Part shown: positions 23,865-62,507 of the stretch, one piece after another | How positions within the stretch are numbered: position 1 is the first letter of the stretch | Layout of the letters: each line of letters begins with the position of its first letter | Virus record (IMG/VR): IMGVR_UViG_3300047095_000752 | Coordinates: 1 to 64,000 of that record | Length of the DNA stretch: 64,000 nucleotides | Strand: one strand, 5' to 3' | Translations under genes and position numbers: made by a program | The notes under the pieces: model-generated | The model's database searches: none | What the model was told of the DNA's origin: nothing | The model's input: the letters and a program-made list of their open reading frames with translations, nothing else

Positions 23865-23880
23865 GGACAAATTTATATAA
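23865..23880 (+). promoter_or_regulatory. Phage promoter motif B (GGACAAATTTATATAA), probably late
   Basis: An identical copy lies upstream of the 44654 gene and a 1-mismatch copy upstream of the 37736 gene. Confidence 0.65.
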
Positions 23881-23921
23881 ATTAATTTCATTAGCTAAAC
23901 ACACAATTAGGAGGATATCCA

Positions 23922-25122: not shown

Positions 25123-25356
25123 ATGGAATTGACAGGGCAGTCGTACGACACTTTCATGGAAATGCCTTGGCTATTTTTTGAAGACTTTTATAAATGGAAA
25201 GTCGACATGGAAAAAGAAAAAAATAAGAGAAATAAAGCCGAACTTGAAAATCAACAAAGTTTACAGCGAAAAATTAAAGCAGAACAATCACAAAGAAATA
25301 CAAGGCAGCGATTACACGCGGAGGCTGCATCCAAAAATAGTCCACGCAGGAGATAA
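25123..25356 (+). CDS. Small baseplate/tail assembly protein (gp51-like or frameshift extension of the upstream gene)
   Basis: MELTGQSYDTFMEMPW resembles the SLTEIENMxPW pattern that follows gp26-like genes. Confidence 0.5.
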   Translation: MELTGQSYDTFMEMPWLFFEDFYKWKVDMEKEKNKRNKAELENQQSLQRKIKAEQSQRNTRQRLHAEAASKNSPRRR

Positions 25357-25358
25357 TT

Positions 25359-25781: not shown

Positions 25782-25791
25782 GGTATTTAAC

Positions 25792-26475: not shown

Positions 26476-26487
26476 GGAAAATACATT

Positions 26488-26946: not shown

Positions 26947-26951
26947 TCACA

Positions 26952-29240: not shown

Positions 29241-29242
29241 CT

Positions 29243-37736: not shown

Positions 37737-37751
37737 CTATAAATCCTTATT

Positions 37752-37767
37752 TTATATACATTTGTCC
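37752..37767 (-). promoter_or_regulatory. Phage promoter motif B
   Basis: Minus strand GGACAAATGTATATAA, heading the 37736-30387 operon. Confidence 0.6.
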
Positions 37768-44654: not shown

Positions 44655-44662
44655 ATCCTTTT

Positions 44663-44678
44663 TTATATAAATTTGTCC
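44663..44678 (-). promoter_or_regulatory. Phage promoter motif B
   Basis: Minus strand GGACAAATTTATATAA. Confidence 0.65.
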
Positions 44679-45265: not shown

Positions 45266-47140
45266 TTATGCTTTCGTTTTACTTATGTTTACCGTAAAGG
45301 TCGGGTACGGAATATCAACTTGGAACTTATCGCTCCGCCCATTGATGCACCATATTGTTTCCATATGTTTAAAGAACTCGTAGTTACCGCAGAGTTCTTC
45401 AACATCGGATTCATAGTCGGTAAAGAACATCACAGTGCTGAGAATATTGTTTTCAAACAAATCTTGAATTTGCTCAAACACTTCTCGGTGTGATGTGCCG
45501 CCGCGCCCTTTTATATTTTTTATCTTTTGAAAGATTTCGTCTTTTGACGTTGCTTCTTCAATTATGATAGTGTCCACAACTACATAGTCATGAACAAATA
45601 CATATATTTTATCGTACTTACCATGAGAATCACATATGATAGAAACTGCAGTATTCAAATCTTCGTCGGGCATTGAACCCGATGAGTCAATGGCTACACA
45701 TAACAATTCGGGGACCAATCGAGTTGGTGTACCCGGAATTGCTATATTCATTTCTTGCATTAAGTGACCCATGTATTTATTGTATGTCGCGAATGATTTT
45801 TCTTCTGATTTTTGAGTCTTGGTGGCAATGGCATTCTTCAGAAGATAATCCCAAGGATACTTCACTTCGAAGAACTTATCGAATAACGTTCCACCCTCAC
45901 CACCGCCAGTGCCTTTACTCAATACCGAAGATAAAGCTTGAGAGTAATTCTGATAGACGAAGGGTGCTTGCTCGCCTATCCCTTTACCACCGGATGAATT
46001 ATTACCCAAGTCATAAATCGATTCATAACTTTTATGTGATACTTTATCGTATACTTGAATGATGATTACCGTCAAAGTCGGCAGCGCATCCTCTGGGATT
46101 TCCTGAAGGTTTTGTTTGGTATCATCATATTCTTCTTCATCTTCGTCGGATTCGGTGTGAGCATCCGGATCTTCGGGTATATGTATCTTAGCATTTATGT
46201 CGGCTACTTTTGAATTTGTGATAAGTGAATCGATCATCGGATTTACATCATCGACATAATCCGGATCATTCTTATCGAAATCCGCAGCTTTATTAGATTT
46301 TGTGAATTTAGGATTTGAGGATTTTATATAATCATCATCAGTGATAGTAGCATCGTTTACGGCGGACTCAATGGCGTCAGACCCATCGAGTAGGAACTCC
46401 ATGTCGCCAGTTTCGATTGCCTTTTTCACTGCGTTCATTTCAATCGCTAATTTTTGACTAAAATCTTTTTGGGTCAGTATATCTTCAACCGTTATTGGTG
46501 GGGGTTGAAGTCCATTTTGTATGAACATTTGTGGTGGTAATAGTGGTATTTTAATTTTCTTTGCTGATATATCAAACTCATTATTAGTTTCAATTCTATA
46601 TGCTAGCGACTCTACAGATTCGAGAGTGTCTTTATCGTGATATCGGTCGATAAAGATTGACTCTTTTGGAAAATGCATTATGTTTGTCGATTTACTATTT
46701 TTATGAAGATCGTGTAATATACTGTTGACTGTATGATCCGCCGCTACGTTAAACACGAGTGCGGATTTCAAGTCTTCCGGTATTCTATCATTATGTCTGA
46801 ATATGTGGTGGATGATTTCATGTATGATTTTGAATAACAGTTTAAAGGCAAAGAACTCGTCGTTCAAGGCTTTTGGGTCTGCTATTATATTTAGGGTGTT
46901 ATCTTCTATGTATACCATACCCGAGACAAGTTCTTGGAGTTTGGTGGATATTTGTTTCATGTACGAGTTATCTACGAATACCAATTTTCGTTCGAGACCC
47001 ATATAGAAGTGTCCGAAGAACTTCAATTTGGATGCAGGATTTATCAATACAGCTTGGATTATCTCTAAATCTTCTTCATACTTTTTTACTAAATTCGAAG
47101 TAAGATCTAGACGTTCGAATTTCTCTAAATCGAATTTCAT
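45266..47140 (-). CDS. Metallopeptidase-like plus VWA domain protein (DUF2201-like)
   Basis: HEIIH..F.H..R, N.AAD..VN, DSSGSM, GRGGT and FFTD motifs. Confidence 0.85.
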   Translation of the reverse strand: MKFDLEKFERLDLTSNLVKKYEEDLEIIQAVLINPASKLKFFGHFYMGLERKLVFVDNSYMKQISTKLQELVSGMVYIEDNTLNIIADPKALNDEFFAFKLLFKIIHEIIHHIFRHNDRIPEDLKSALVFNVAADHTVNSILHDLHKNSKSTNIMHFPKESIFIDRYHDKDTLESVESLAYRIETNNEFDISAKKIKIPLLPPQMFIQNGLQPPPITVEDILTQKDFSQKLAIEMNAVKKAIETGDMEFLLDGSDAIESAVNDATITDDDYIKSSNPKFTKSNKAADFDKNDPDYVDDVNPMIDSLITNSKVADINAKIHIPEDPDAHTESDEDEEEYDDTKQNLQEIPEDALPTLTVIIIQVYDKVSHKSYESIYDLGNNSSGGKGIGEQAPFVYQNYSQALSSVLSKGTGGGEGGTLFDKFFEVKYPWDYLLKNAIATKTQKSEEKSFATYNKYMGHLMQEMNIAIPGTPTRLVPELLCVAIDSSGSMPDEDLNTAVSIICDSHGKYDKIYVFVHDYVVVDTIIIEEATSKDEIFQKIKNIKGRGGTSHREVFEQIQDLFENNILSTVMFFTDYESDVEELCGNYEFFKHMETIWCINGRSDKFQVDIPYPTFTVNISKTKA

Positions 47141-47147
47141 GTTATAT

Positions 47148-48497
47148 CTATTTGTTGTTGACTTTGTTGTATCGTTCGGAGAGATTGGAGACGGTGCGAG
47201 TCTTACCCGTCATATCTTGCGTGATGTAGTGAAGAATGCTGTTCGGGATGAGATTGTTGTTTGCCCACTGGCTGATGACATCGAACATGGTAACAGAATC
47301 CGCGCCAATTTGGACCCGGTTGTGTTTGGATGCCAGAGTCATGATTGCGAGTGACGCCAATTCCGTGAGACCGGATTCTTTATAATCCATAACAATCTTG
47401 GTGTAAATGTCGATGATGCGCTTGATTTCTTTGAGTTGCTTAATGTTATCTTGTTCCGAAGGCTTGGATACCTGTCGGGGATCATTATTCTTCTCGATGA
47501 AATCCATGATCTTGGACTTCACATATTCCGTGCAAGCGATGATAACGGGATAACGGTCAGCATTCGAACTGGAGCGAGGCATTTTCCCGCTCTTCTCGAA
47601 AATCTCAACGACCGGAACTTTGGAATATACAAGATAGAAATTGGTCAACTGGGCTGCTGCTTGGTGGGATACTGCACCTTCGGCGAGCGCGGTGAATATG
47701 TCGGTATTCTTGGACAGATCAATATAGTCCGAAATTGCAGTGAATGTGTTTGCAAGTCCTGCCCATGACCGGGGAGTACCATGGGGTGTGCTCGCTTCAG
47801 CTTCGAGAAAGAAGCCATCATTCGCGGAATTGCGGAGAAATGAAAGAACGATGGGATTCAGCCGGTTTGGCTCAGCATATTGGTTGATCCACTCATGGCG
47901 ATTCGGGCGGACATTGATAATCTGCATGCGATTCATGATTGCCGACATGGACTGCTTCGCGCCCGCAAGAGTGGATGCGTTACCAGCAGCACAGAAGCGA
48001 ACATTATTCGGCATCTTATATCCGTGAATCTTGTGATCTGTGAACAATTCGAAACCATAGGACTGAACACTGGCGGGTGCGAGGTGCCAATCGTCAAACA
48101 ATACGATGCTGAATTCATGGTCCTTGGAAAGCTGCTGAATCTGATAGAAAAGTTCAGGAGCAAGCCAATGTGTGTATTTATTCTTCACCTCCTCCCACGT
48201 ACCGTCTTCACGTTCGACCGATGTGAGTGAATCGCTGATGGTCGGGAGACCGGAAAGCTGCTCAATGGGAAGCAGACCAATCGTAACCGAAAATCCGCCG
48301 AATCCGTATTTCTTGAGTACATCCTTGAAGATAGAAGATTTACCGGTACCGGGCTGAGACACGATATACGGAATCAAATAGTCGTTGGTATTTTCCGTAA
48401 AGCGGCGGTGGGCAAGCTTAACCGCCATTTCAAATCCCATGTCGATGTAGATGGGGCTTTTCGGACGGGACAGTTCTTCAGTGGTTTTGGAAGCCAT
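47148..48497 (-). CDS. MoxR-like AAA+ ATPase
   Basis: QPGTGKS, LSGLP, LFDD, AAGN, MNR and TPRSW motifs; paired with the DUF2201-like gene. Confidence 0.85.
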   Translation of the reverse strand: MASKTTEELSRPKSPIYIDMGFEMAVKLAHRRFTENTNDYLIPYIVSQPGTGKSSIFKDVLKKYGFGGFSVTIGLLPIEQLSGLPTISDSLTSVEREDGTWEEVKNKYTHWLAPELFYQIQQLSKDHEFSIVLFDDWHLAPASVQSYGFELFTDHKIHGYKMPNNVRFCAAGNASTLAGAKQSMSAIMNRMQIINVRPNRHEWINQYAEPNRLNPIVLSFLRNSANDGFFLEAEASTPHGTPRSWAGLANTFTAISDYIDLSKNTDIFTALAEGAVSHQAAAQLTNFYLVYSKVPVVEIFEKSGKMPRSSSNADRYPVIIACTEYVKSKIMDFIEKNNDPRQVSKPSEQDNIKQLKEIKRIIDIYTKIVMDYKESGLTELASLAIMTLASKHNRVQIGADSVTMFDVISQWANNNLIPNSILHYITQDMTGKTRTVSNLSERYNKVNNK

Positions 48498-49228
48498 TAA
48501 TAGCGTCTTTCTCTTTCGTTGTACTGAATAAGTAAAGTTTGTACAAAAGGGTAAATATAATTACTATATATCACAAACTTGTCAACATCAGATGAATCTA
48601 TATTAGATAGCATTGATTTACTTATCTTTAATAATGTATCTCCTTTCATTGGGATTGTTATGACCCCATCTTTAGACTCTCTTGCAAACCAGTTCATATT
48701 GTTAGATGCTAAAAAGGTTTTACGTAAATACTCACACCCTTCTAGAATCTTTTTTCGATTAGAAAAATCAATATTGAACATTAGTTTGTAAAAGGATGTA
48801 TCAAGAGGTTTATGGATCATACCTTTAATTGCTACGGTATTATCCATGTATAGTATCAACAACTTTTTATTATCCATTGATTTTATAAGTTTAGTTATAT
48901 TTTTTCTAAATAACAATTTAAATGATATATCCGTTGACTCTAATACCTTATCAACTATGAATCCATCTTTTTGTCTCCATACGAGGTTTTCCTCTTTTAA
49001 ATTATTTTCTTTTACATATAGTCGAATTAATCTTTTCATCCCATCGGACAAAACGTGTTTTAATACTGGATTTTCTTTTTGCATTTGCCCGATTTGTATA
49101 TTTCTTAATTCCTTATTATCATAGTCGATATGAGATAAATCACACTGAATATTATTGAGGAGGTTATATACGCAAGCCTCAAAGTCATACTCGTATAAAT
49201 TATCAAATACTTTTCTATTATCTTTCAC
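48497..49228 (-). CDS. Putative divergent DNA-polymerase palm-like protein
   Basis: YEYDF (motif A-like), RNIQIG, QKDGFI (motif C-like) and IKG. Confidence 0.45.
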   Translation of the reverse strand: MKDNRKVFDNLYEYDFEACVYNLLNNIQCDLSHIDYDNKELRNIQIGQMQKENPVLKHVLSDGMKRLIRLYVKENNLKEENLVWRQKDGFIVDKVLESTDISFKLLFRKNITKLIKSMDNKKLLILYMDNTVAIKGMIHKPLDTSFYKLMFNIDFSNRKKILEGCEYLRKTFLASNNMNWFARESKDGVITIPMKGDTLLKISKSMLSNIDSSDVDKFVIYSNYIYPFVQTLLIQYNERERRY

Positions 49229-50335: not shown

Positions 50336-51244
50336 TTAGTCCTCTAATTGTATGCCGTGTTCTAATAAGAATTGTTTGGCTTCTTTCAGGGAACCTTTTG
50401 AACCTTTGGCTGAGTTATCTTTCCAAGTTAATAATTGTATATTTTTTCTTTTGTTGATGGCTGATTTAACTTCAACTTCATTTAGATTGTATTTTACAGT
50501 TAACTTTGAAAATAATTTAACCGGAATTATATGATCTACTACATAAGAATCGGGATCTTTTATAAAGTTATTGTAGTTTGGATCTGATTTCATATGGTTT
50601 TGGATCCATTTTTTAGAATGTGGATTTCTCAATCTTAAATTTAAAGGAATTTCTTCTCGATTTGGGTTCCACCTTGAGTGGGTTTCACCAAAATTTTTTT
50701 CTAACCAGCATTGTTTACATCGATATCCTTGTTGAAAATTATTAAATGAACTAATAGATTCACAACCACATTTACATCTATATTTCATTTTAGTGTAATT
50801 ATTAATATACTCGGTTTCTAATAGTTCATACCCTTCACCTTTGAAGTGATTACAAACTTGTTCATATGTTAATTTTTCGTTACCACCACATTTTGCGCAT
50901 CTTCTATCTCTTTGAAAATTACTAAATGATGTTAAACTTTTGTTACCGCAATTGCATTTATATCGCATTGGAGTTATATTGTTAATATATTCAGTTTCTA
51001 ACAATTCACAGCCTTGTTCTTTGAAAGAATTGTAGACATACTCGAAATTATGTTTCTCATTACCACCACATTTTGCGCATCGGTGACCTCTTTTAAAAGT
51101 ATCGAGTCGTATTTCACTTTTATTACCACAACTACAACGATATTTCATCGAGGTTTTATTATTAATATATTTGGACTCTAACAGTTCACACCCTTCATCA
51201 AAAAAGATCTTTTCAACTTCTTGTTGTGTTAATTTTGTAGACAT
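50336..51244 (-). mobile_element. Zn-repeat HNH endonuclease
   Basis: Three GCELLETEYINN..MKYRCxCG...RCAKC repeats plus YVVDHIIP...NIQ...N..K. Confidence 0.75.
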
Positions 51245-51247: not shown

Positions 51248-54200
51248 TCAGTCCTCTAATTCAAGTCCAATTGTTTTAAACATCGCATTCAGGAGGCTCA
51301 ATGTGCGGGGTTTATCCGGCGCATCGTTCTCAAGAAGGATCTCTTCGTTTTGAAGGATATCTGATAATACTCGGAGCTTCTTTCCGGGCGAATCCGAATG
51401 CGTCGTCAGAAATTCCTCAATTGTGATCTCAGCGCCCTGTGCGCACAATGCCCAGATTTCCATTTCGCCAAGTTTGTGCCCACCAGATAATTTCTTACCA
51501 CCAACCGGTTGGAGTGTTGTATTGACGTATGGTCCAACGGATCGACTGATAATTTTATCTTCACTGCGGTGGATCAGCTTCTGAAAATATATTGATCCAA
51601 CAGCAATTGGATTCTTAAAGCATTTTTTATCGTCTATATACAAGGACTGTTTATATTCAGATCCGGTTAACTTCATGATCTGATCCAATTGTTGTGGAGT
51701 TATGCTGTTAAATGGAGGCTGCACAATCTGTATATCATCCAGAGCTTCGCAGATATCCTTCTCATAGAGAATGTTTTGAAAACGTTTGTAGGTTGTAGCT
51801 GCATAAATCTTATCGTCTGAGTTATCAAACAATTCTAAAAACTTTTGTAACTTCTTGTTCGCTTTATCGGAAAGTTTTCCATTCTTGTGATGATCAGACA
51901 TAAGATAAGTTTTCATATTATACAAGGCTTCGGTGGAATGTAGCTCGTATAACTGCCCACAGTTCATGCGGCTGATAATACCAAGGGGATTCACAATGAT
52001 CTCAACGTGACGACCGTCCGCCAGTTGAGGCATCTGATCCTTTGGGATGATCTTGGATATAATTCCTTTTGCCCCATGCCTGTTCGATACTTTATCCCCA
52101 ACAGAGATCTTAGATTTATGGATCCCTTTTAGGATGATCTTGATCCCTTCGATGTTCTTGCCCTTCTCGCTGTATTTAGCCGATTTCTTTGGGGGCGGTG
52201 CGTCGCTTACATGTAACTTGGACAATTCATAAAAATCAAGAATATTATCAATCTTTTCATTACTCATATATTCGGACAGTTGCTTACGAATTTCATTTAA
52301 CCGACCATTCTGATTTTTGATCAAAGTTTTAATGAAATTATGGAACTGAGGAATTTGTTTGTTCCAAGTATTAGGGTAAAGTTCAATACTAGTTATTTCA
52401 CAATCAATCGGAATTACCATATTATTTGGTTCGGTATTTATACTTTCAATACCGTCATGTCCGATATGCTTTAATTTAGCGTAAATCTCACCCTTTTTTA
52501 GCTTATCTCCAACCGAAGGTAAAGGCTTATAAGAATCATCGAGTAAACTTAGAAGGATCTGACCACCTTCAATTTCAAATGATAATTCTACAGTGTGTAA
52601 CGATGTGTAACGATCCACCACATCTTCTGAAATGACGATACCATCCTCGTAATTATAACCTTCCCAGATCGCGACCGCTGTCGTCAGATTATGCCCCAAT
52701 GTCAAATCGCCATCTTTGAAAAATTTGGAAATAGCAATAACATCATCTTTCTCGAATTTATCACCAACTTGCAAATCAGAATACATATAATCAGCACTAT
52801 TCAAATACATTGGACGATATGACAGCTTAAAAATATCAATATTACCAGACTCGTATTTAATAACAATGAATTCGTGAGATTTATAGGCGACCTCACCATC
52901 TTCCTTGGCAATTTGCTTGAAAGATGTATATTCAAAATATTTATCTTCCCAACCAGTTTTGATGAATGGCTTCGTTGCATTTTCAAGTAAAATTGACTGT
53001 TTCATCTGACCTGATGCCATTTGAAGTCTGGTTTGATCGTTGTTACTTAAAAATGGAACTAAGGTTATAGGATGACTACAGACCATATCCAAATCAGACT
53101 CCGTCATGCGCCCAGTCTCATCAATTTTAGCGCCGGGACAGAAATTTAAAATAACACCACAACCATCTCGATCTGGGGTGTCAGCAGGGCAGAAGATCCC
53201 ATAATGTGATGGATCCAAGTTCTTTAGGTGGCTTGGAGTTTTGCTCTTAGTGAAACTTCCGGGTCCAATAATTGTACTCTGTGTTAATGCTGAGATTTCG
53301 CCAAGTGGATTATAAGGGAAATTATGGTGAATGATTGAACTTACATTACAAGAGTCGAGAAGTATAGTAGTCGGAATTTTGAACTTAACACGCTTATTAT
53401 CATTGAGGATACAGATCATATCAAATACAGATCGGATTAAATTATATAAGACATACTCGGAAAACCGAATTCTTTTATTTTCTAAGGATGTATCAGACTT
53501 TGTACCCTCACTCAGAGAATATAGTAACTCCAGAACTGGAGAATTGGTTTTCATGTATGATTTGGAGAATGTATCAATCTCAACTGAATTTGAGATCGCA
53601 AAAAGAATTGATCTTCCCTTCTTGAGATTATCTGTGATCGCCACATTACTAGTACGGTAAGCTCCGAGTAATTCGATCAGTTTGGATTCTTTATTACCCT
53701 TCCAGAGTGTATTACACCGAGCTACTAACTGCTCGATAGCGGGGTTCTCGTTTGGAAGAGAATCTACGAAGGTTTGAAATTCTTCTCGCTTATACATCGC
53801 ACAAATGATATTTTCAATAGGAATATCTTTATAAAATTTCATATGGTTGAGAAAGATCTTGACAAGAAACGAATCGTCTTTATCAATTCCAGCACGCATG
53901 GAGATTACATTATTCTTGAAATTAAGAATCGTTTTATTCCGAACCACACGGTGAATGACAGGTTCGTCGATTAGCTGGAATACAGGGACTTTTAGTAGAC
54001 CGCCAATATAAAAGAATTGATCTTGGAGGAGTTCTGGTACTTGGATCGTATATACATGTTCTTTTTTAATAGTTTTCTTTTGAGTCAATTCATTTACATG
54101 GATCTTTAAAGTACGATAAATGCTCTTTTTAATTTCTTCCTTGCGCTTGCGCTTATTCTTCGCCCATGTGATTTTTACGAATTTCCAATTTTCTAAGAGA

Positions 54201-54286
54201 TCAATGTTTTGGAATAATCCTCCGATTGCGCCCTTGACTCGATCATAGTCCCATTCGTAACTTCTCTGCTCAAATGTAGTTTTCAT
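51248..54286 (-). CDS. rpoB: Phage DNA-directed RNA polymerase beta subunit
   Basis: CPADTPD, GQMKQS, GYNYEDGI, GDKVSNRHGAKG, SRMNCGQ, KLIH and GGHKLGEME. Confidence 0.93.
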   Translation of the reverse strand: MKTTFEQRSYEWDYDRVKGAIGGLFQNIDLLENWKFVKITWAKNKRKRKEEIKKSIYRTLKIHVNELTQKKTIKKEHVYTIQVPELLQDQFFYIGGLLKVPVFQLIDEPVIHRVVRNKTILNFKNNVISMRAGIDKDDSFLVKIFLNHMKFYKDIPIENIICAMYKREEFQTFVDSLPNENPAIEQLVARCNTLWKGNKESKLIELLGAYRTSNVAITDNLKKGRSILFAISNSVEIDTFSKSYMKTNSPVLELLYSLSEGTKSDTSLENKRIRFSEYVLYNLIRSVFDMICILNDNKRVKFKIPTTILLDSCNVSSIIHHNFPYNPLGEISALTQSTIIGPGSFTKSKTPSHLKNLDPSHYGIFCPADTPDRDGCGVILNFCPGAKIDETGRMTESDLDMVCSHPITLVPFLSNNDQTRLQMASGQMKQSILLENATKPFIKTGWEDKYFEYTSFKQIAKEDGEVAYKSHEFIVIKYESGNIDIFKLSYRPMYLNSADYMYSDLQVGDKFEKDDVIAISKFFKDGDLTLGHNLTTAVAIWEGYNYEDGIVISEDVVDRYTSLHTVELSFEIEGGQILLSLLDDSYKPLPSVGDKLKKGEIYAKLKHIGHDGIESINTEPNNMVIPIDCEITSIELYPNTWNKQIPQFHNFIKTLIKNQNGRLNEIRKQLSEYMSNEKIDNILDFYELSKLHVSDAPPPKKSAKYSEKGKNIEGIKIILKGIHKSKISVGDKVSNRHGAKGIISKIIPKDQMPQLADGRHVEIIVNPLGIISRMNCGQLYELHSTEALYNMKTYLMSDHHKNGKLSDKANKKLQKFLELFDNSDDKIYAATTYKRFQNILYEKDICEALDDIQIVQPPFNSITPQQLDQIMKLTGSEYKQSLYIDDKKCFKNPIAVGSIYFQKLIHRSEDKIISRSVGPYVNTTLQPVGGKKLSGGHKLGEMEIWALCAQGAEITIEEFLTTHSDSPGKKLRVLSDILQNEEILLENDAPDKPRTLSLLNAMFKTIGLELED

Positions 54287-54325
54287 ATTGATATATTTCC
54301 TCGTGTGCTAAGATGAGTGATTATA

Positions 54326-55270
54326 TCAAATAGTATGGTAAACTGTCAATTTTTCGTTGAACCAAGCCATGAATTCTTCTTGGATGTATTTTCCGCCTTT
54401 AGATCCATTTTCTTTTTGAGGTATTATTCTTAAGTTTTCCCGGAGGTTACATATTTCTTTAACAATTGTTTGCCCGTAGATATTATCAAGATCATTATCG
54501 ATAAAAGCTATTCTCGGATAAATATGATCTACCGTATAATCAGATTTATTCCATCGATTTCCCGTTGCCTTGGCTGTTTTTTGTGATTGGGTATAATCCG
54601 TGTATTTTGGATCATCCGATAAAATGTAAAGTTTTTTAAGATCAAACCTTAAATATCCAGCCCTAGCCAGACGTGTTCTATCTTGTTGGAATCTAAAATG
54701 GTTTTTACCGGTATTTTTTTTATATCCACATTCTCTACATCGTTGATCATTTTGAAAATTATTATATGTTATTAAACTTTCCTCCCCACACTCACATCTA
54801 TATTTCATTTTAGTATGATTATTAATGTACTTAGTTTCTAAAAGTTCACAACCTTCATTTTTAAAGATCTTATATACAGTTTCATATGTTAACTTTTCTT
54901 TACCCGAACATTTTCTACACCGTTGTTCCAAATGTTTAAAATTACTATATTCTATCACGCTTATGTTATCACATGAACATCTATACCTCATTTTAGTATG
55001 GGCATTTATATACTCTGTTTCTAGTAGTTCGCAGCCTTTGTCTTTAAAAGAATTGTAAACATCTTCAAATTTAAGTTTTTCAGATCCGCCACATTTAGCG
55101 CATCTTCGATTGTGACTTTTAAAATTATTAAATATTATTTCACTTTTATTACCACATGAACACTGATACCTCATTTTAGTTGCATTATTAATATATTCAG
55201 TTTCTAATAATTCGCAGCCTTGTTCTTTGAAATAATTATAAACAACATCATATGTTAATTTAACCGGCAT
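54326..55270 (-). mobile_element. Zn-repeat HNH endonuclease
   Basis: Paralogue of 50336-51244; three repeats plus YTVDHIYP...NLR...N..K. Confidence 0.75.
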
Positions 55271-55284
55271 ATCTACAGTCCTAA

Positions 55285-57993
55285 TTAAAGTCTAAACAAT
55301 TTTGAAATAGCGCTCGGGGTGTCTGCACTGGAGCTTGTAACACCATCGAGTAATCGATTCTTTAGTCGGGCGAATGAAATACCCAATAACCATGATGAGA
55401 TCGATGGGATCTTCAAGATACTCTCAAATTTGTATGGAAAGTTATTTCGATTCGGGATCGTGCGCCACATCTTCTTGTCGGACCACATCATCGCGCTTGC
55501 AATCGTCTCGTAATGTACAAGCATTATATTTCCGTACTGACTAAAAATACTATTTAGAGCCAATACGAGATCAATTGGTTCATTCACTTCCTTCAAATCG
55601 GTCGGCTTGTGAAATAACTTATTTACAAGACTCATTCCAGAAATAATATCTTGGTTCTGGTTATTTTCACCAGATCCTTGCGCAACTCCAGAGGTGTGAA
55701 ATGAGCGCAATACTAACTGCGTGATACGTTCACCGATACACTGGGTAGCAACAATGCCAATCTGAGTGCTGTGTAGGATGTTCGACACATTCCCATAACA
55801 CTTCTTGCAAATGTGTTTACTCTTACAATAAATGGGGCTGCGAAGTTGAATTTTACGTCCAATCAGAGCTTTATAATTATCACGAGTTATTAAGAATAAA
55901 GACCCATCCTTACCGACGATATAGCGCCAAATTAAAGTTCTGGCCAAAGCTTCGCTTTTACTATCGTCAATTCGACCAGTCTTATCACGAACAATGACCT
56001 CCAAATTCATGTATTCCGTAGTTTTGCAGTCGTCCACATCTCCCAGTTCCATATTTACGGTACTGTAGATCAATTGGCGGGTGATATAGCCACTGCTTGA
56101 AGTTGAGAGTGCCGTGTCGAGCAGACCCTTACGAGTACCCCAAGCACTGTTGAAATAATCTTTCTGCTTCATACCACGTACAAGACTTGCACGAATGAGA
56201 TCTGGACGAAGCTTGTTAGTCACGTCCGCTACGTACCCACGAGCCACTGTAAGCTGTAGAAGCTGGTCCATCGACCCACGAGCACCAGACTCAGTGAAAA
56301 TGTAATATGGCTTCTTCTTGATCTTAGCGTGAATCTTTTTATTGGTGGATATTTTTAACATATCTTTTTGGATATCACCAGTAAGTGAGTCTGAAAATGC
56401 ATCGAACTCTGGATCATGAAGATCATCAATCGAAAGAGTGTAACCGTATTTTGTCGAAAGTCGAAACCCGAGTTCTTTAACTGCATCTAAAACTTTCATG
56501 CTGACCAATGGACTATACTTAAGAACAATATCATTCAAAATAGTTTTTAGAAGTTTATTGTCAACTGTCTCATTAATAACATGATAATCTTCGGGTAAAC
56601 ATTGATTGAAAAGGAGTCTTTCCTTTGACATGACGACGTTCTTATATTCATATCTTTTATTGGTGTTATTTTTTGTAGCAGTGTAGATCACTAAAATAAG
56701 GTCCTGATTTGGCTTTGGAACGATCTCGCCATCGGCAGGAGATAAAAGATTATTCCAAATTCCGATCTTTTCATTAATATCTTTGGCGCATCGGTCGGTT
56801 ACAGCTATATAAATAGCCATCTGATCGCCGTCAAAATCTGCGTTATAAGCTCCGCAAATAAGGGGGTGAATCATGATAGTATTGCCGGGGTTAATCTTAA
56901 TATGAAATGCCAGTACAGACATTCGGTGGAGTGTCGGTTGGCGATTTAATATGCATACTCGATTCTTAACGAAGTCTTCTAAATAAGTCATTAATTGTGT
57001 GTCATTTTCAACAATACATTTATCAATTAATTCTGAAGCCTTATTATGTCTATTCACAACCTTCCGGTTTACAAGATAAGTAATAAGTTTTGGTTTAAAC
57101 ATTTCAAGCAAGATTAAATATGGGATCCGACATTCATCCAAATGTAATGTCGGATCCGGGCTAATTACCGCGCGACCGGAGAAGTCCACGCGCTTACCAA
57201 GGATATTTCCTCGAATGAGTCCATTCTTCTTGCTTAGCTTATCCATAATATATTCATAAATTTCAATAGCATGGGTTTGAATAGCTCTAAAATATATAAT
57301 ATGAATATCACTATTTTCTTTTATTTCAAAGTTCATATCCCGAATTCGAGATGTTCTCATTAATAACTCTCTATAATTTCGGTTTAAAGCATCGGTTGTA
57401 TAACTACCATTATTATTTTTATTTATATTTCTAAATGCTGGAGGCATAACAATAACATTATTGCAAATCATTATGTCTTCATTATCAGTTATGAATTTAA
57501 GTTCTGGCTTTTCAGAATCTTTACATAGATAAAGTATGTATGATTTTGTACCTTCGACCCCGACCAACTTTTTGGCTGGATCGTCAACATTAGGATCGAA
57601 TTCCACCAGTTCCGCTTCATCATTAAAAATATATTCAACTTTATAAAACAACATATTATAAAGGACTTTTTTAATTCCGGGCTTAGCCTTGAGGATAATC
57701 ATATAAATCAAAGGATTTAGGATAGGAAAAGGTAGTGCAATCTTAGCGTAACGCTTCGCTCGCTCTTCTGAGGACGTTATCTCGACGTTACATACTTTAC
57801 ATACATCCTCGTCACCATGAGGTCCACGGTATATGGATCTTGAACATCCACACTTATAGGATCGAAGTGGACCAAAAATCTGTTGGGAGAACAGACCTGC
57901 GGGTGTAAGCTTACAATTTTCATCGATCTTATCCGCTGTAATTTCTGGTAAATCTTGTGTAAATTCATCGATATTGAAGTGTTTTAGTTTCAC
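55285..57993 (-). CDS. rpoC: Phage DNA-directed RNA polymerase beta-prime subunit
   Basis: GLFSQQIFG, zinc finger, GKRVDFSGRAVI, NRQPTLH, catalytic NADFDGD, SGARG and TQLVLRSFH. Confidence 0.95.
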   Translation of the reverse strand: MKLKHFNIDEFTQDLPEITADKIDENCKLTPAGLFSQQIFGPLRSYKCGCSRSIYRGPHGDEDVCKVCNVEITSSEERAKRYAKIALPFPILNPLIYMIILKAKPGIKKVLYNMLFYKVEYIFNDEAELVEFDPNVDDPAKKLVGVEGTKSYILYLCKDSEKPELKFITDNEDIMICNNVIVMPPAFRNINKNNNGSYTTDALNRNYRELLMRTSRIRDMNFEIKENSDIHIIYFRAIQTHAIEIYEYIMDKLSKKNGLIRGNILGKRVDFSGRAVISPDPTLHLDECRIPYLILLEMFKPKLITYLVNRKVVNRHNKASELIDKCIVENDTQLMTYLEDFVKNRVCILNRQPTLHRMSVLAFHIKINPGNTIMIHPLICGAYNADFDGDQMAIYIAVTDRCAKDINEKIGIWNNLLSPADGEIVPKPNQDLILVIYTATKNNTNKRYEYKNVVMSKERLLFNQCLPEDYHVINETVDNKLLKTILNDIVLKYSPLVSMKVLDAVKELGFRLSTKYGYTLSIDDLHDPEFDAFSDSLTGDIQKDMLKISTNKKIHAKIKKKPYYIFTESGARGSMDQLLQLTVARGYVADVTNKLRPDLIRASLVRGMKQKDYFNSAWGTRKGLLDTALSTSSSGYITRQLIYSTVNMELGDVDDCKTTEYMNLEVIVRDKTGRIDDSKSEALARTLIWRYIVGKDGSLFLITRDNYKALIGRKIQLRSPIYCKSKHICKKCYGNVSNILHSTQIGIVATQCIGERITQLVLRSFHTSGVAQGSGENNQNQDIISGMSLVNKLFHKPTDLKEVNEPIDLVLALNSIFSQYGNIMLVHYETIASAMMWSDKKMWRTIPNRNNFPYKFESILKIPSISSWLLGISFARLKNRLLDGVTSSSADTPSAISKLFRL

Positions 57994-58053
57994 TAGAGAA
58001 TTCTCCTAAGAATATATATAAATTATACCACCTTCTACCGTTAGATTTCAATA

Positions 58054-58776
58054 CTATATCAAAACATACTTGTCATCGACTTTAAATGGTATCTTAGATG
58101 TACAATCTATAACTTCATGTTTATTAGCTTTTATTACGATATTATTGGTGTAACTAGAGATGCTATCCCATTTACCTAATGTTGGTGCTGGAATTTCATT
58201 TGAAATTATTGCTGTATACGAATCTGTTAATACAGGCTTTGCTTTAACATATACAAATTCTTTAAACAAATCATACATTTTACACATTTCATTCGAATCA
58301 TCATAAACTAAAATATATTCTCTAACATTGAAATGTGATTTATAAACTAATCTTACAGAGTAATCACTAAATATTAGATTATATCTTTCTTTCATATATA
58401 ATCTACTATTTATAAAATCGTGTATAATATTACTTGTGCCCCCTAATATGACATATGAACTAATTTTTTTAGGAGAATATTGTGTGGCACTTATATGAGC
58501 ATTGTGTTCTCTGTCCAAATCTATAAAACAATTGAAGAAATATTTTTTAGGGTATGACATATTGTGTCTTAGTTTATTAGAGGGATTGGTCTTTCTCCCC
58601 ACTGAAGTAAACATATAATGATTTTCAAAAAATATATAACTGGATATGTAAAGTTTAGGGTACACGTCTTTTATATGTTGGTTATTGTTATTTATAAATA
58701 TTGAGTACGATAACATTTGTATATTGTACATAGCCTTTGATATTAAACGACCATTCATAAAATCTGAGACTTGCAT
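58054..58776 (-). CDS. Hypothetical protein
   Basis: 240 aa ORF with a GAGGAGG RBS. Confidence 0.6.
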   Translation of the reverse strand: MQVSDFMNGRLISKAMYNIQMLSYSIFINNNNQHIKDVYPKLYISSYIFFENHYMFTSVGRKTNPSNKLRHNMSYPKKYFFNCFIDLDREHNAHISATQYSPKKISSYVILGGTSNIIHDFINSRLYMKERYNLIFSDYSVRLVYKSHFNVREYILVYDDSNEMCKMYDLFKEFVYVKAKPVLTDSYTAIISNEIPAPTLGKWDSISSYTNNIVIKANKHEVIDCTSKIPFKVDDKYVLI

Positions 58777-58781
58777 TATAG

Positions 58782-59417
58782 CTACGAGACCTCCTCACCG
58801 TTTATAAACATATTTGAATAACTAGACGAATCCCACCATTTCATATCAAATAACTTTATTTCTTTATATTTTTTAATATATTTTGTTGTACTTTTCATAT
58901 TTTTTGATGTAAATATATGTTCATGTATTCTATTTTTCGAAAAATGAATTCCATAATACAACGAACCTCCATTTGATTTTACTAATTTATTTTTTTGAGG
59001 CGGAGTATTATCATTCGAATGTGTTGTATATTCACAATTAAATTCAGCATATGTTTTAATTTTAACATTTTTAATATTAGACTTTCTAATATCTATTTTA
59101 CAAAAATGAGGACCTTTATAATTATTATCGTACATCATGGTCGAAAATAGGTAGTCACTCATATCGTAACTATGTAAACCACAGTATAAAGAATAAAATC
59201 TTAACTTTATATTCAAATCTCTAACAAATGAATGCGAAAGAATTCGGTTTAACACAATCGATTTACTTTTATGTTCACCCTTAACGTATATATGTTCAAT
59301 ATAATATTTAATTGAAGGTTTTACTATCCGATTGGATATCCTATCAAAAAATCTATATAAAGCAAGTATTGTATTATCTAATTCCCATATCGTATCTTCG
59401 TTAGTTGGAAGTTGCAT
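58782..59417 (-). CDS. Hypothetical protein
   Basis: 211 aa ORF overlapping the upstream stop. Confidence 0.55.
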   Translation of the reverse strand: MQLPTNEDTIWELDNTILALYRFFDRISNRIVKPSIKYYIEHIYVKGEHKSKSIVLNRILSHSFVRDLNIKLRFYSLYCGLHSYDMSDYLFSTMMYDNNYKGPHFCKIDIRKSNIKNVKIKTYAEFNCEYTTHSNDNTPPQKNKLVKSNGGSLYYGIHFSKNRIHEHIFTSKNMKSTTKYIKKYKEIKLFDMKWWDSSSYSNMFINGEEVS

Positions 59418-60189
59418 TTAAAAGCGCCTTCAGTGATGGGTCCAGTTTATAATAATTCGTTAAATTGTATATCTTCATAGTTTCTATGACATCTTCAATT
59501 ATTTGCGAATCTATTTTTTTATGTATAAAATTCCCTATACAGTATTTATTGTTTTCATAATTTATATTTGGGTGTATGTTTTTATTTGTAAATGCTTTTA
59601 CCTCAACTAATAGATTCGAGCTATTTGTAGTAAATCTTATCTCACCCACCATAGTCCTTAATTTGACGGGTAGCCGTTTTATCATTCCAGATTCTGACTT
59701 GTACAAGTCGCATTCTATCTTATTATGTATTGTTATATTATTCCTATCAAATATAACTAAATCGTACTTGTATGAAAGTTCTTCGTTAAATGTATTATTT
59801 ACCGTTATGTTTAAAACATAATATAGATGTGTTAATATATTTCTTTTTTCGGGAATACTTATATTAATCTTACTAAACATATCTTTATAATTGTAACAAA
59901 ACTCGTCCAGTGTAGTTATCTCATTTAAAAGACTTGGGGTTATTATGATATGTTTGTTTTCTGATTTGTAAAAGATATAAAAAAAATACAAGTTATTTAA
60001 AACAATAGGGGTGATACTATATTCTTTAATTTCGGATAATATTTGATTTAAGTGTATTGTTTTATATTCGTATATTTCAATATTATGTTCTTTTTTTACA
60101 CAAATTTTATTACAGTTAAATTTATTTAAAAACGCCTTTACATTCAAGTTATTTTGTTTTGGTCTAAATAAGTTCAATAAGTTAATCAT
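59401..60189 (-). CDS. Protein with a C-terminal prokaryotic E2/UBC-like motif
   Basis: IHPNINYENNKYCIG...YN resembles the UBC HPN(x7-8)C signature. Confidence 0.45.
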   Translation of the reverse strand: MINLLNLFRPKQNNLNVKAFLNKFNCNKICVKKEHNIEIYEYKTIHLNQILSEIKEYSITPIVLNNLYFFYIFYKSENKHIIITPSLLNEITTLDEFCYNYKDMFSKINISIPEKRNILTHLYYVLNITVNNTFNEELSYKYDLVIFDRNNITIHNKIECDLYKSESGMIKRLPVKLRTMVGEIRFTTNSSNLLVEVKAFTNKNIHPNINYENNKYCIGNFIHKKIDSQIIEDVIETMKIYNLTNYYKLDPSLKALLNATSN

Positions 60190-60293
60190 AAAATACCTCG
60201 CTGTTGATTAACTTGATTAGAGTCAGTTAACTTTTCCTTATAGATCAAATACTAATCAGATCCATCCTAAATTATATCAATTATCTCAATTAC

Positions 60294-60323
60294 TCCCCTA
60301 CCCCCATATAAGGGGGTAGGGGA
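60294..60323. other. Perfect 12-bp GC-rich hairpin without a U-tract
   Basis: tcccctaccccc-atataa-gggggtagggga. Confidence 0.6.
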
Positions 60324-60331
60324 TATAATAT

Positions 60332-60625
60332 TTAAGCTGAAATTACAATAGGAGTTATATAAATTTTAATTATAGATTCATCTTTACATACCTCATATAA
60401 TAAGGTATAGTCTAAATTATTAGTACAATATCTTTTCAATTTATTATAGAAATTTGACGGTTTAATTTTGATATAATCTTCACCACCAACTACGAATAAA
60501 TAAATTTCAAATGTTGGGTAAGTTGAAAAATACAATTCTGCTTCATTGGTGTTATGAATTTTAATGTTTGTAGTAGGATTCAATATAATATGCTCTTCCG
60601 TATTCAATACAGATTGCTTACTCAT
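60332..60625 (-). CDS. Small hypothetical protein coupled to the ThiF-like gene
   Basis: 97 aa, ATGA overlap. Confidence 0.55.
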   Translation of the reverse strand: MSKQSVLNTEEHIILNPTTNIKIHNTNEAELYFSTYPTFEIYLFVVGGEDYIKIKPSNFYNKLKRYCTNNLDYTLLYEVCKDESIIKIYITPIVISA

Positions 60626-61179
60626 AGGCTGGACATCAGATGATTTAACACAATCTGAGTTTCTTTTCCTTTAACTATAGGAAATTTTATACTAATAATA
60701 TCCTCTATTACATAGGATACGGTTAGTAATGAATAGTAATCTGAATTCTTAATGGAATAACTATGAGGTTCATTCAAGTCATTATTTTTAGGAAATTTTA
60801 TTATATGACCATATGGACCGTCTGACGATATCTTCATATAAAATATATCCGACTGATTTTTATTATCCCTACAATCTATATATACCGTGTTGTTAATTTC
60901 ATTATTGGAGTAATCTTTTAAAAATTCTGGGAATTTATTATTAACCGGTCGTAATCCAAGGAGAGGATTTATCTGATATAACTCATCCTCTAAATGATAT
61001 GATTTAGGATATCCAATTTTATTGTGACCGTCTTCCGTAATTACGTCAGGATCTATAAACTCTAATAATTCAAATTTACATTTGGTTTCTAAACTTCTAG
61101 ATGCAAATAGACGTAATAGAGCAGATCCCACAGTCCCACATCCAACTACACTAAGTTTTTTCATTTGCGCATCCAACAA
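60622..61179 (-). CDS. Minimal ThiF/E1-like adenylation-domain protein
   Basis: VVGCGTVGS, FIDPD.I, IGYPK...L...INP and IDCRDN. Confidence 0.7.
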   Translation of the reverse strand: MLDAQMKKLSVVGCGTVGSALLRLFASRSLETKCKFELLEFIDPDVITEDGHNKIGYPKSYHLEDELYQINPLLGLRPVNNKFPEFLKDYSNNEINNTVYIDCRDNKNQSDIFYMKISSDGPYGHIIKFPKNNDLNEPHSYSIKNSDYYSLLTVSYVIEDIISIKFPIVKGKETQIVLNHLMSSL

Positions 61180-61199
61180 CTTAGCTGGGGGATGTTATA

Positions 61200-62507
61200 T
61201 TAGACTGTTTGAAGTTTTTTGGAATTATAGGCGATAAGGGATTTCGCGATGATCTTACCCGTTACTTGGGTTAGACCACTATGTTCAGCCGCAGTATAAT
61301 TGTCGTTAAGAATTCCGGAGAGGCAGAGAAGATTGTAGTACAGGTTGTTGTATGATTCCGGGAAGTTTTCAAGGATATCATCAAACTTGTTACGATTTTC
61401 TTTGCACATTTTGGACTTGATCTTTTTGATATCACTTTCGGTCAGCTTATATTCTTTCATTGCATGTACAGACTTGATAACTTTTTCTTCTTCGATGCGA
61501 TGGATAGAGTCCTTGATGTCGGCGATTTGAAGACCCTTGTGGATATACTTTGTGGCGAATTGATTGATGGTAAAGAAGTCGCGAATAGACTTATCACCCT
61601 GTTTGAAATGGAAGTTAAAGCTGATATGGAAGGAATTCTTGCCGTCATATGAATTTGAGATACACATTTCAATTACGGTCTTATTTGCGCTGAATACTTC
61701 TTCGGATTTGAATCCGGATACAATGTAGAATAGATCTTTCTGGACTTGAGATTCAATTGTGCGGAGGGTCTTTTCAGTCTCAGCAATCCATTCGATAACG
61801 AAGGGTGATATTTTCAGGTCGATCTGGTCGATTGACATTTCAGACTGGATTTTCTTGATAAGATCGTCCATGTGAATGACAACATAATTGTGGGATAGGA
61901 GGGTATTTGAGGTATGGTAGGTGTCAGATCCCGGTACACGGCTATGGGTGGAATAATAATTACTGGGGTTACCGCTTGGGTCCAGAATCTGCTTATATGT
62001 GACTTCAAGCTTATCGAATTCGTTGAATGAATATTCGTTATTTGAATGTTCCACGTTGCGGAGCTTGCTGGCGAAGTCCGGGAGCGTGGCGAGATTACGC
62101 TGCACTTTCTCCCGTGGTGGAGCCTTGGGCTTGGCGGTTGTGTTTGCGTTTGTAGAACCCTTGGGACGACCGCGACCACGCTTCACCGTAACAACAGGGG
62201 CTTCATGTTGCACTGTTGGTGAAGTGATGGGTTGTGTGGGTTCGGGATCTGATGTGTCGGAATTAATATTGAAGATACCGAGAGCTTTGCTATATTCGAC
62301 ATCGTCGTCGTCTTCTTCTTCGATGTCTTCATCTTCATCTTCGTCAATATCTTCGTCGGGTTCGTATGATATAATCGTGCGGGGTTCAAGAAATGGGTTC
62401 GTATTGTCTTCGACACTATCAAAATTGAATGCGTCGTTGATGTTTGAAATAAGTGAATCGGTATCATTAACTTGGTCTACGTGTTCTGACATGAAAGTCA
62501 ACTCCAA
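61200..62507 (-). CDS. Acidic N-terminus, AT-hook and DUF932-like domain protein
   Basis: Poly-D/E tract, KRGRGRPKGS AT-hook and SNSYDG motif. Confidence 0.55.
   Translation of the reverse strand: MELTFMSEHVDQVNDTDSLISNINDAFNFDSVEDNTNPFLEPRTIISYEPDEDIDEDEDEDIEEEDDDDVEYSKALGIFNINSDTSDPEPTQPITSPTVQHEAPVVTVKRGRGRPKGSTNANTTAKPKAPPREKVQRNLATLPDFASKLRNVEHSNNEYSFNEFDKLEVTYKQILDPSGNPSNYYSTHSRVPGSDTYHTSNTLLSHNYVVIHMDDLIKKIQSEMSIDQIDLKISPFVIEWIAETEKTLRTIESQVQKDLFYIVSGFKSEEVFSANKTVIEMCISNSYDGKNSFHISFNFHFKQGDKSIRDFFTINQFATKYIHKGLQIADIKDSIHRIEEEKVIKSVHAMKEYKLTESDIKKIKSKMCKENRNKFDDILENFPESYNNLYYNLLCLSGILNDNYTAAEHSGLTQVTGKIIAKSLIAYNSKKLQTV

What the first reader, a model, noticed from the sequence alone, without database searches (positions are those of the whole stretch)
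51248..57993. Compact, unsplit beta-prime and beta RNAP genes in reversed order with T4-like virion genes
Established: phiKZ/AR9-type RNAPs have beta and beta-prime split into several polypeptides, and T4-like phages use the host RNAP. Seen: single-chain 902-aa and 1012-aa subunits, much shorter than bacterial ones, with beta-prime upstream and no alpha or sigma gene recognised in the window. Inference: a distinct minimal two-barrel RNAP lineage whose specificity factor may be among the co-oriented unknown ORFs at 58054-62507.
Basis: partly seen in the sequence, partly recalled or inferred. Interest (0 to 1): 0.6.

Follow-up and report, generated by a model that had tools for sequence, protein, structure and literature searches.

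The report
Known-lineage phage RNA polymerase gene pair
The two genes encode an intact, compact RNA polymerase of an uncultured lake-water jumbo phage; this polymerase lineage ("mReC") was already described from metagenomes in 2020, and the same genome carries a second polymerase, split into five pieces, outside the window.

Summary
ORFs 55285-57993(-) (902 aa) and 51248-54286(-) (1012 aa) are intact beta' and beta subunits. Beta' lies upstream, and no alpha or sigma gene was found.

The lineage is not new. The pair belongs to the mReC lineage (Weinheimer & Aylward 2020). It has full-length relatives on at least 301 IMG/VR contigs, all with beta' next to and upstream of beta. Two of those contigs are listed as mReC in that paper, with the same subunit sizes.

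- A homing-endonuclease gene sits between the two subunit genes, and another sits after beta.
- The window is the first 64 kb of a 245-kb jumbo-phage record.
- That record also encodes a second, paralogous polymerase ("B-type"), split into five ORFs.

ORFs 58054-62507 are not conserved polymerase partners. They are ORFans plus ubiquitin-like E1/E2-type genes.

Sigma70-like promoters precede the A-type genes, a helicase gene and a thymidylate synthase gene. A separate motif, GGACAAAT..TATAAA, precedes virion genes and the B-type pieces. I infer that A is made early and is not packaged, while B is made late and may be packaged.

Verdict: a new member of a known kind, of moderate interest.

The parts
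55285..57993 (-). A-type RNA polymerase beta' subunit, 902 aa, unsplit
   Evidence: Pfam Rpb1 domains 1-5. Closest solved structures are bacterial beta', E 5e-86. 37-45% identity over its full length on at least 301 IMG/VR contigs. Falls in the set A clade.
56824..56844 (-). Catalytic NADFDGD motif (residues 384-390)
57790..57852 (-). Beta' zinc-binding element CxC..CxxC (residues 48-68). Kept in A-type beta', absent from B-type.
   Evidence: Alignment with E. coli and other bacteria.
58022..58051 (-). Sigma70-like promoter TTGAAA-N18-(TG)TATAAT, 29 nt upstream of the beta' start
   Evidence: Matches 11 of 12 positions and has an extended -10 element.
54326..55270 (-). Free-standing homing-endonuclease-like ORF (314 aa, CapR domain; phrog_559/681) inserted between beta' and beta
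   Evidence: Absent from all 80 related loci.
54320..54349 (-). Sigma70-like promoter TTGACA-N18-(TG)TATAAT, overlapping the 3' end of the endonuclease ORF, 34 nt upstream of the beta start
   Evidence: Matches 12 of 12 positions, the best match in the genome.
51248..54286 (-). A-type RNA polymerase beta subunit, 1012 aa, unsplit
   Evidence: Pfam Rpb2 domains 3, 6 and 7. Closest solved structures are bacterial beta, E 5e-72; AR9 nvRNAP beta scores only 5e-29. Present next to beta' in 80 of 80 loci. The set A clade has 100* support.
50336..51244 (-). Second homing-endonuclease-like ORF (302 aa) directly after beta
   Evidence: phrog_559/681. Absent from all relatives.
48497..49228 (-). Conserved 243-aa neighbour with a family-B DNA-polymerase-like fold. 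Not a polymerase-specificity candidate.
   Evidence: Found in 53 of 80 loci. Model pLDDT 90.9. Foldseek best hits are PolB enzymes.
58054..59417 (-). Two ORFans (240 and 211 aa) in a 26% GC stretch, absent from the nearest relative L007
59401..62507 (-). Genes shared with L007: a 262-aa ORF (weak E2-like lead), a 185-aa ThiF/E1-like ORF (60622-61179) and a 435-aa ORF of unknown function. Together these look like the remnant of the ubiquitin-like module that flanks the polymerase in relatives.
44662..44678 (-). P1 motif GGACAAATTTATATAAA, 24 nt upstream of ORF 42738-44654. It heads the gene string that runs to the terminase gene.
37751..37767 (-). P1 motif heading the string 36759-37736 / 1513-aa tail lysin / 603-aa virion protein
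23865..23881 (+). P1 motif heading the plus-strand baseplate module (23922-30316)

Best explanation
[quoted passage not shown] This one is a lake-water jumbo phage.

Shown here:
- Both proteins keep the catalytic residues.
- The compact size and the beta'->beta order are traits of the whole lineage.
- The genes sit on a phage record that also encodes a paralogous B-type polymerase. In this genome the B-type enzyme is broken into five ORFs, and two of the break points have homing-endonuclease-like genes beside them.
- No alpha or sigma homologue is detectable.

Inferred:
- The A pair is an early, non-virion enzyme. It has sigma70-like promoters, like the helicase and thymidylate synthase genes.
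- It works as a minimal beta-beta' core with an unidentified phage factor.
- It transcribes late genes from the GGACAAAT-N2-3-T[AG]TAAA motif (P1).
- The B-type pieces all lie in P1-headed gene strings together with virion genes. They would therefore be made late and are candidates for packaging into the virion, as in phiKZ and AR9.
For: Identity and family:
- Pfam and PDB matches.
- At least 301 IMG/VR contigs with full-length relatives.
- A large set of ~890-930-aa, metagenome-only homologues at 38-70% identity.
- L014 (277,131 bp) and L015 (29,248 bp) are contigs named in the mReC tables. Those tables list beta 999-1033 aa and beta' 902-915 aa, plus a second type of about 1362 and 1005 aa on the same contigs.
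- In both trees the window pair falls inside set A. Set B and bacteria each form their own clade.

Synteny: beta'->beta in 80 of 80 loci.

Second polymerase.

Endonuclease-like genes at the break points.

No alpha or sigma. The weak r4 hits are HTH tails of HNH endonucleases.

Promoters:
- 36 sigma70-like sites against 13.5 +/- 3.5 in shuffles. The two best sit in front of beta and beta'. Others precede the helicase and thymidylate synthase genes.
- 20 P1 sites, all oriented with the gene, 18 of them 8-83 nt upstream of a start. They precede tail-tube, virion and baseplate genes and B-type beta'N and betaC.
Against: - No expression data exist: no RNA run holds the stretch. Promoter classes and timing are therefore read from sequence alone.
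- Many P1- and sigma70-headed genes have no annotation.
- BetaC has both a P1 site and a weak sigma70-like site.
- P1 was not found enriched in the relatives' loci.
- No virion proteome is available, so which enzyme is packaged is a guess.
- The capsid gene that marks mReC phages was not found in this incomplete record.
- The set A clade has only 85% SH-aLRT support in the beta' tree.
Confidence: 0.8

Rival explanations
1. One reading: an undescribed minimal two-barrel polymerase lineage, the phage's own sole polymerase, with its specificity factor encoded among ORFs 58054-62507.
For: No close relative exists among 50,697 GenBank phage records; identities there are 32% or lower. No alpha or sigma was found. 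The ORFs are co-oriented and of unknown function.
Against: The lineage was published as mReC, and two related contigs are named in that paper. A second polymerase is present in the same record. ORFs 58054-59417 are absent even from the nearest relative. The rest are E1/E2-like or of unknown function, and were found in 0-1 of 80 loci by blastp.
Confidence: 0.04
2. The roles are the reverse of my model: the A-type enzyme is the virion-packaged early polymerase and the split B-type enzyme is the non-virion late one.
For: The A pair lies in the same long minus-strand gene array as the terminase and tail genes. In phiKZ and AR9 both enzymes are split, so the split state says nothing about role (PMC7598289).
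Against: The A genes carry the same sigma70-like promoter type as the helicase and thymidylate synthase genes, and no P1 site. All five B pieces lie in P1-headed strings, and P1 also heads virion-gene strings.
Confidence: 0.2
3. Hybrid enzyme: the phage beta and beta' assemble with host alpha, omega and sigma. The sigma70-like promoters would then be read by this hybrid rather than by the host core.
For: The A-type subunits are far closer to bacterial subunits than to AR9. They keep the beta' zinc element and a clamp coiled-coil. The genome is enriched in sigma70-like promoters. No phage alpha or sigma is found.
Against: - The flap-tip helix, which binds sigma region 4 and is near-invariant in bacteria (EEKLLRAIF), is shortened and unrecognisable.
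- The rudder loop is missing.
- The conserved clamp-helix residues have diverged.
- The C-terminal tail of beta' is missing.
Confidence: 0.08
4. These are bacterial rpoB/rpoC: either recently captured from a host or present through assembly contamination.
For: The best solved-structure matches are bacterial.
Against: - Identity to any of about 600 bacterial rpoC loci is 31% or lower.
- Bacteria form a separate clade with 99* support.
- The gene order is opposite to the bacterial one.
- The genes are flanked by phage genes on a 245-kb virus record.
- The same stretch recurs in many lake metagenomes.
Confidence: 0.01

Closest known systems
mReC polymerase (multi-subunit-RNAP-encoding Caudovirales; Weinheimer & Aylward, Nat Commun 2020, PMC7481178)
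   Same: - Unsplit beta and beta' of at least 800 aa with NADxDGD.
- The same sizes: beta about 1000 aa and beta' about 900 aa.
- Adjacent genes.
- T4-type TerL (PF03237).
- A clade apart from cellular polymerases.
- Two of the window's relatives are contigs listed in that paper.
- The paper's tables also list 'a' and 'b' sets on a single contig.
   Different: - This phage is a divergent member: 45-47% identity to the nearest IMG/VR contig and 37-40% to most. Closer homologues, at 64-70%, are seen only on short contigs in the larger protein collection.
- Its gene pair is interrupted by homing-endonuclease genes.
- Its B-type set is split into five ORFs.
- In my term searches the paper's main text does not discuss the two paralogous sets, promoters or function.
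phiKZ / AR9 virion and non-virion multisubunit polymerases
   Same: - A jumbo phage with two paralogous beta/beta' sets and no alpha, omega or sigma homologues.
- One set (B) is split into several ORFs here.
- An AR9 beta' piece and the AR9 nvRNAP beta C-terminal piece fall on the phage side of the branch that separates bacteria.
- The P1 core GACA-N6-TA loosely recalls the AR9 late consensus AACA-N6-T[A/G]. This is a lead only.
   Different: - The A-type subunits are unsplit and much nearer to bacterial sequences (E 1e-72 against 5e-29 for beta).
- The virion genes are T4-like, not phiKZ-like.
- In relatives both sets are unsplit.
- A gp68/gp226-like fifth subunit was not searched for.
- phiKZ itself could not be placed in the trees: Pfam found no phiKZ beta' and one weak beta fragment.
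Bacterial RNA polymerase core (beta, beta')
   Same: It shares the catalytic double-psi beta-barrels, NADFDGD, the beta' zinc element, the clamp coiled-coil, the flap domain, and the bridge-helix and trigger-loop regions. Bacterial subunits are the best sequence matches among solved structures.
   Different: - Gene order is beta'->beta.
- Beta' is roughly 150-500 aa shorter and beta roughly 50-350 aa shorter than most bacterial counterparts.
- The rudder loop, part of the jaw, the beta' C-terminal tail and the flap-tip helix motif are missing or unrecognisable.
- No alpha, omega or sigma genes are present.
Unsplit polymerase of the cultured Yersinia phages YerA41 / vB_Yru_GN1 (145 kb)
   Same: Adjacent unsplit genes in the order beta' (1090 aa) -> beta (925 aa), in a cultured tailed phage.
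   Different: Only about 25% identical. It sits on a long branch outside set A and set B in the trees. Only one beta' and one beta gene gave Pfam matches in that genome.

Membership tests
mReC polymerase lineage | Beta and beta' homologues, each at least 800 aa with a stop codon, on one viral contig | tested here: met
   1012 aa and 902 aa on a 245-kb IMG/VR record. The criteria are quoted from the paper's methods.
mReC polymerase lineage | NADxDGD motif in beta' | tested here: met
   NADFDGD at residues 384-390.
mReC polymerase lineage | Clusters with mReC sequences, apart from cellular polymerases | tested here: met
   Set A includes L014, an mReC contig. Its support is 85 in the beta' tree and 100* in the beta tree. 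Bacteria are separated with 99* support. L014 and L015 were matched to the paper's tables by sample id and contig length. The published alignment itself was not available.
mReC polymerase lineage | T4-type terminase (PF03237) and Gp23-type capsid (PF07068) | tested here: inconclusive
   TerL PF03237 is present (23.8 bits, cut-off 22). Gp23 was not found in this 78%-complete record but is present in 7 of 7 long relatives.
phiKZ/AR9-type phage polymerases | Beta and beta' each split into two or more polypeptides | tested here: not met
   The A pair in the window is unsplit. The B set outside the window is split into five ORFs.
phiKZ/AR9-type phage polymerases | Two paralogous sets per genome (virion and non-virion) | tested here: met
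   Two sets are present in the window's record and in 5 of 5 long relatives. Which one is packaged in the virion was not tested.
phiKZ/AR9-type phage polymerases | A gp68/gp226-like fifth, promoter-specificity subunit | not tested
   No reference sequence or profile was fetched. These proteins are too divergent for the searches I ran.
Bacterial RNA polymerase | Alpha dimer and sigma factor encoded or used; sigma-binding flap-tip helix and clamp-helix surface conserved | tested here: not met
   No PF01000 and no PF04542 above cut-off in eight records. The flap-tip motif and rudder are not conserved. Use of host subunits cannot be tested with these tools.

The most novel reading that the evidence does not exclude
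The jumbo mReC-type phages with T4-like virion genes that carry both sets may run a phiKZ-like two-polymerase programme that is independent of the host polymerase, using bacterial-like subunits: a late-made, packaged B enzyme and an early-made A enzyme that reads GGACAAAT..TATAAA promoters. This genome may also catch the fission of beta and beta' in progress. The B set is in five pieces, with homing-endonuclease-like genes at two of the junctions, while several relatives (G001, G003, G005) keep it whole. That would argue that the split phiKZ/AR9 architecture is derived, not a pre-LUCA relic.
Probability: 0.25. Interest if true: 0.65.

Novelty: new member of a known kind. Interest (0 to 1): 0.35.

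Why it matters
By itself the gene pair adds one more divergent member to a lineage published from metagenomes. No cultured member turned up in any collection searched here, and I found no biochemical study of it.

The wider picture, if confirmed, would make this group a useful comparison to phiKZ and AR9 for two questions: how phages escape dependence on the host polymerase, and whether split polymerase subunits are ancestral or derived. That picture has three parts:
- two paralogous polymerases per genome;
- two promoter classes that separate them;
- an unsplit set in relatives that is split here next to homing endonucleases.

Tried and rejected
- **Sigma and alpha search in the window's record and seven relatives.** Only sub-threshold Sigma70_r4 hits appeared. 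They turned out to be HTH tails of NUMOD4-HNH_3 homing endonucleases.
- **Conserved neighbours as candidate subunits.** Profiles of 34 neighbour families from 80 loci found only five in this genome. The best-conserved one, the 243-aa ORF, folds like a family-B DNA polymerase. The 262-aa ORF has only a weak E2-like lead. The Atlas search returned nothing for the 243-aa ORF.
- **Gp23 capsid in the window's record.** None found, by Pfam or by tblastn with a relative's capsid protein.
- **phiKZ in the trees.** Pfam-based genome searches found no beta' and one weak beta fragment, so phiKZ was left out. Only single AR9 pieces were used, and they sit on very long branches.
- **Beta tree under the mixture model.** It did not finish in two runs, so LG+G4 was used instead.
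- **P1 motif in relatives.** No enrichment; only ribosome-binding sites stood out. The regions upstream of the B genes in relatives share no obvious motif.
- **Reads.** Only metagenome contigs were available, none RNA, so there is no information on transcript ends.
- **Jobs not run.** The complex prediction was not run: beta' plus beta exceeds its size limit and no partner candidate justified it. The large representative-protein search and the second fold job were not needed.

Full report
**Observation.** The 902-aa ORF 55285-57993(-) matches Rpb1 domains 1-5. The 1012-aa ORF 51248-54286(-) matches Rpb2 domains 3, 6 and 7. Beta' carries NADFDGD at residues 384-390 and a CxC..CxxC zinc element at residues 48-68. 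Beta keeps GDKxxNRHGxKG and GEME. Both proteins therefore look catalytically intact. Beta' is upstream of beta. Both match phage HNH/homing-endonuclease families, and the first has a CapR domain. Neither is present in any of 80 related loci, so I read them as mobile insertions.

**Context.** The window is the first 64 kb of a 245,225-bp IMG/VR virus record that is estimated to be 78% complete. The window holds a T4-type large terminase, a baseplate wedge gene, a tail lysin and a tail-tube-like protein. The same stretch recurs in many lake-water metagenomes, but no RNA run holds it.

**Relatives.** GenBank phages contain nothing close; identities there are 32% or lower. IMG/VR has at least 301 contigs encoding full-length relatives of the 902-aa protein at 37-45% identity. 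The large protein collection lists 120 metagenome-only homologues of about 890-930 aa at 38-70% identity. None comes from a named cultured phage. In all 80 fetched loci, a beta gene of about 1000 aa follows the beta' gene of about 900 aa. The compact size and the "reversed" order are therefore traits of the whole lineage.

**The lineage is published.** Weinheimer & Aylward (2020, PMC7481178) defined mReC as viral contigs encoding both beta and beta' of at least 800 aa with NADxDGD. These contigs cluster apart from cellular polymerases and carry Gp23-type capsids and PF03237 terminases. Their tables list contig 3300001782_WOR52_10000459 (277,131 bp), which is my L014, and Ga0075125_10000139 (29,248 bp), which is my L015. 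They give subunit pairs of 999-1033 and 902-915 aa.

**Trees.** I built a beta' tree (67 rows, site-heterogeneous model, quick search) and a beta tree (59 rows, LG+G4). In both, the window pair falls in "set A" together with L014. Support for set A is 85 in the beta' tree and 100* in the beta tree. Bacteria are separated from the phage sequences by a 99* branch. The best bacterial rpoC is only 27-31% identical. However, this family is described, not biochemically characterised.

**A second polymerase.** The same record holds further beta' and beta homologues outside the window. Five long relatives, two of them complete with terminal repeats, each carry two adjacent pairs, both in the order beta'->beta:
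- an A-type pair;
- a "B-type" pair, with beta' of 780-1009 aa and beta of 1003-1371 aa.

The mReC tables also list "a" and "b" sets on single contigs. My term searches found no discussion of this in the main text.

In the window's genome the B set is in five ORFs:

| Piece | Coordinates |
|---|---|
| beta'N | 123579-124499 |
| beta'M | 121344-122834 |
| beta'C | within 117767-119323 |
| betaN | 86724-88364 |
| betaC | 77830-80313 |

A 572-aa homing endonuclease (phrog_3339, E 1.6e-121) sits between beta'M and beta'C. A 423-aa CapR-domain ORF directly follows betaN. Set B, including the split window set, is a 100* clade in both trees.

**What is missing compared with bacteria.** I aligned the subunits with E. 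coli and four other bacteria.
- A-type beta' lacks the lineage-specific SI3 insertion, the rudder loop (E. coli 309-325), residues 517-555, part of the jaw, and the C-terminal tail.
- A-type beta lacks SI1, parts of 581-655, and part of SI2.
- The flap-tip helix, near-invariant in bacteria, is shortened and unrecognisable.
- The clamp-helix residues have diverged.
- B-type beta' lacks the zinc element altogether.

No alpha (PF01000) and no sigma region 2 above cut-off occur in eight records. The weak region-4 hits are HTH tails of NUMOD4-HNH_3 endonucleases. This argues for a minimal beta-beta' core with a phage-specific factor, as in phiKZ and AR9, rather than use of host sigma.

**The proposed specificity factor.** By blastp, ORFs 58054-62507 are absent from 79-80 of the 80 related loci. 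A comparison with the nearest relative, L007, gives the following:
- The 435-aa, 185-aa and 262-aa ORFs are shared with L007.
- The 240-aa and 211-aa ORFs next to beta' are not shared, and they lie in the lowest-GC stretch of the window (26%).

The 185-aa ORF matches the ThiF/E1-like family that flanks the polymerase in relatives. The 262-aa ORF has only weak E2-like leads. In most relatives the block around the pair is: radical SAM, E2-like, JAB, two ThiF-like genes, beta', beta, then FolE2. None of these is a plausible polymerase subunit. The one widely conserved unknown neighbour, the 243-aa ORF 48497-49228, gives a confident model (pLDDT 90.9) that resembles family-B DNA polymerases.

**Promoters (sequence only).**
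- *Sigma70-like sites.* The two best sigma70-like sites in the 245-kb record lie 34 nt upstream of beta (TTGACA-N18-TG-TATAAT) and 29 nt upstream of beta'. Genome-wide there are 36 such sites against 13.5 +/- 3.5 in shuffles. Half of them are intergenic and 5-75 nt upstream of co-oriented starts, including a DNA helicase gene and a thymidylate synthase gene.
- *The P1 motif.* A different motif, GGACAAAT-N2-3-T[AG]TAAA, occurs at 20 sites, all oriented with the gene, and 18 of them lie 8-83 nt upstream of a start. It heads a tail-tube-like gene, a virion protein gene, the baseplate module and the strings containing the tail lysin and the terminase. It also sits directly in front of B-type beta'N and betaC, and it heads the string that contains betaN.

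**Model.** From this I infer, but have not shown, the following. The A pair is made early. It reads P1 late promoters. The B enzyme is made late with the virion proteins and may be packaged. The reverse assignment, and a hybrid enzyme using host subunits, remain possible.

**Verdict.** The pair is a divergent new member of the known mReC lineage. The two-polymerase layout, the promoter dichotomy and the endonuclease-associated splitting of the B set are the parts worth following up.

Noticed in passing
genome (G000) 77830-80313, 86724-88364, 117767-119323, 121344-122834, 123579-124499, all minus strand (outside the window): A second, B-type polymerase is split into five ORFs. Its orthologues in relatives G001, G003 and G005 are single beta' and beta genes. 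Homing-endonuclease-like genes sit at two junctions (119606-121324 and 85507-86778).
   Followed up: partly
window 19579, 23865 (+); 37767, 44678 (-); 16 more sites in the genome: Motif GGACAAAT-N2-3-T[AG]TAAA upstream of co-oriented starts (18 of 20 sites within 8-83 nt). It heads virion-gene strings and the B-type polymerase pieces. It is a candidate phage late promoter.
   Followed up: partly
L041:722-9209 and 16168-17055; the same block occurs in most of L008-L086: Relatives keep a conserved block around the polymerase pair: radical SAM, an E2-like 850-aa protein, JAB, two ThiF/E1-like proteins and FolE2 GTP cyclohydrolase. This amounts to a phage ubiquitin-like conjugation module plus possible deazaguanine chemistry.
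   Followed up: no
window 48497-49228 (-): A 243-aa protein conserved in 53 of 80 loci. The confident model resembles a family-B DNA polymerase core (TM by query 0.43-0.53). Invariant YD, KxxRN, YDG and KG motifs are present.
   Followed up: partly
window 14059-14760, 39583-40584, 50336-51244, 54326-55270; genome 188282-188812, 216128-216640: At least two families of free-standing homing endonucleases occur in many copies: a CapR/phrog_559 type and a NUMOD4-HNH_3-HTH type. Relative G002 gave 22 weak Sigma70_r4 (HTH) matches scattered through ORFs of roughly 65-300 aa, which may be the HTH tails of the second type; this was not checked.
   Followed up: partly
window 1869-9654 (-): A nucleic-acid repair cluster: an RNA ligase, a PNKP-type ligase-domain protein and an NAD-dependent DNA ligase with a BRCT domain.
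   Followed up: no
window 45266-48497 (-): A MoxR-like ATPase (phrog_1297) next to a VWA/DUF2201 protein with a metallopeptidase-like N-terminus.
   Followed up: no
window 54823-55162: In contigs from two other lake samples (X5, X7), this part of the endonuclease ORF is replaced by 26 other letters. The insertion is therefore polymorphic or decaying in the population.
   Followed up: no
proteins P0085, P0105, P0119: Some A-type beta' homologues are longer (1056-1285 aa) and carry an intein domain (PF14890).
   Followed up: no
genome 80314-80487: Similarity to the relatives' B-type beta continues about 170 nt upstream of the betaC start. It runs across a stop codon and across the P1 site, and it overlaps the part also encoded at the end of betaN. 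This may be a remnant of the fission junction.
   Followed up: no
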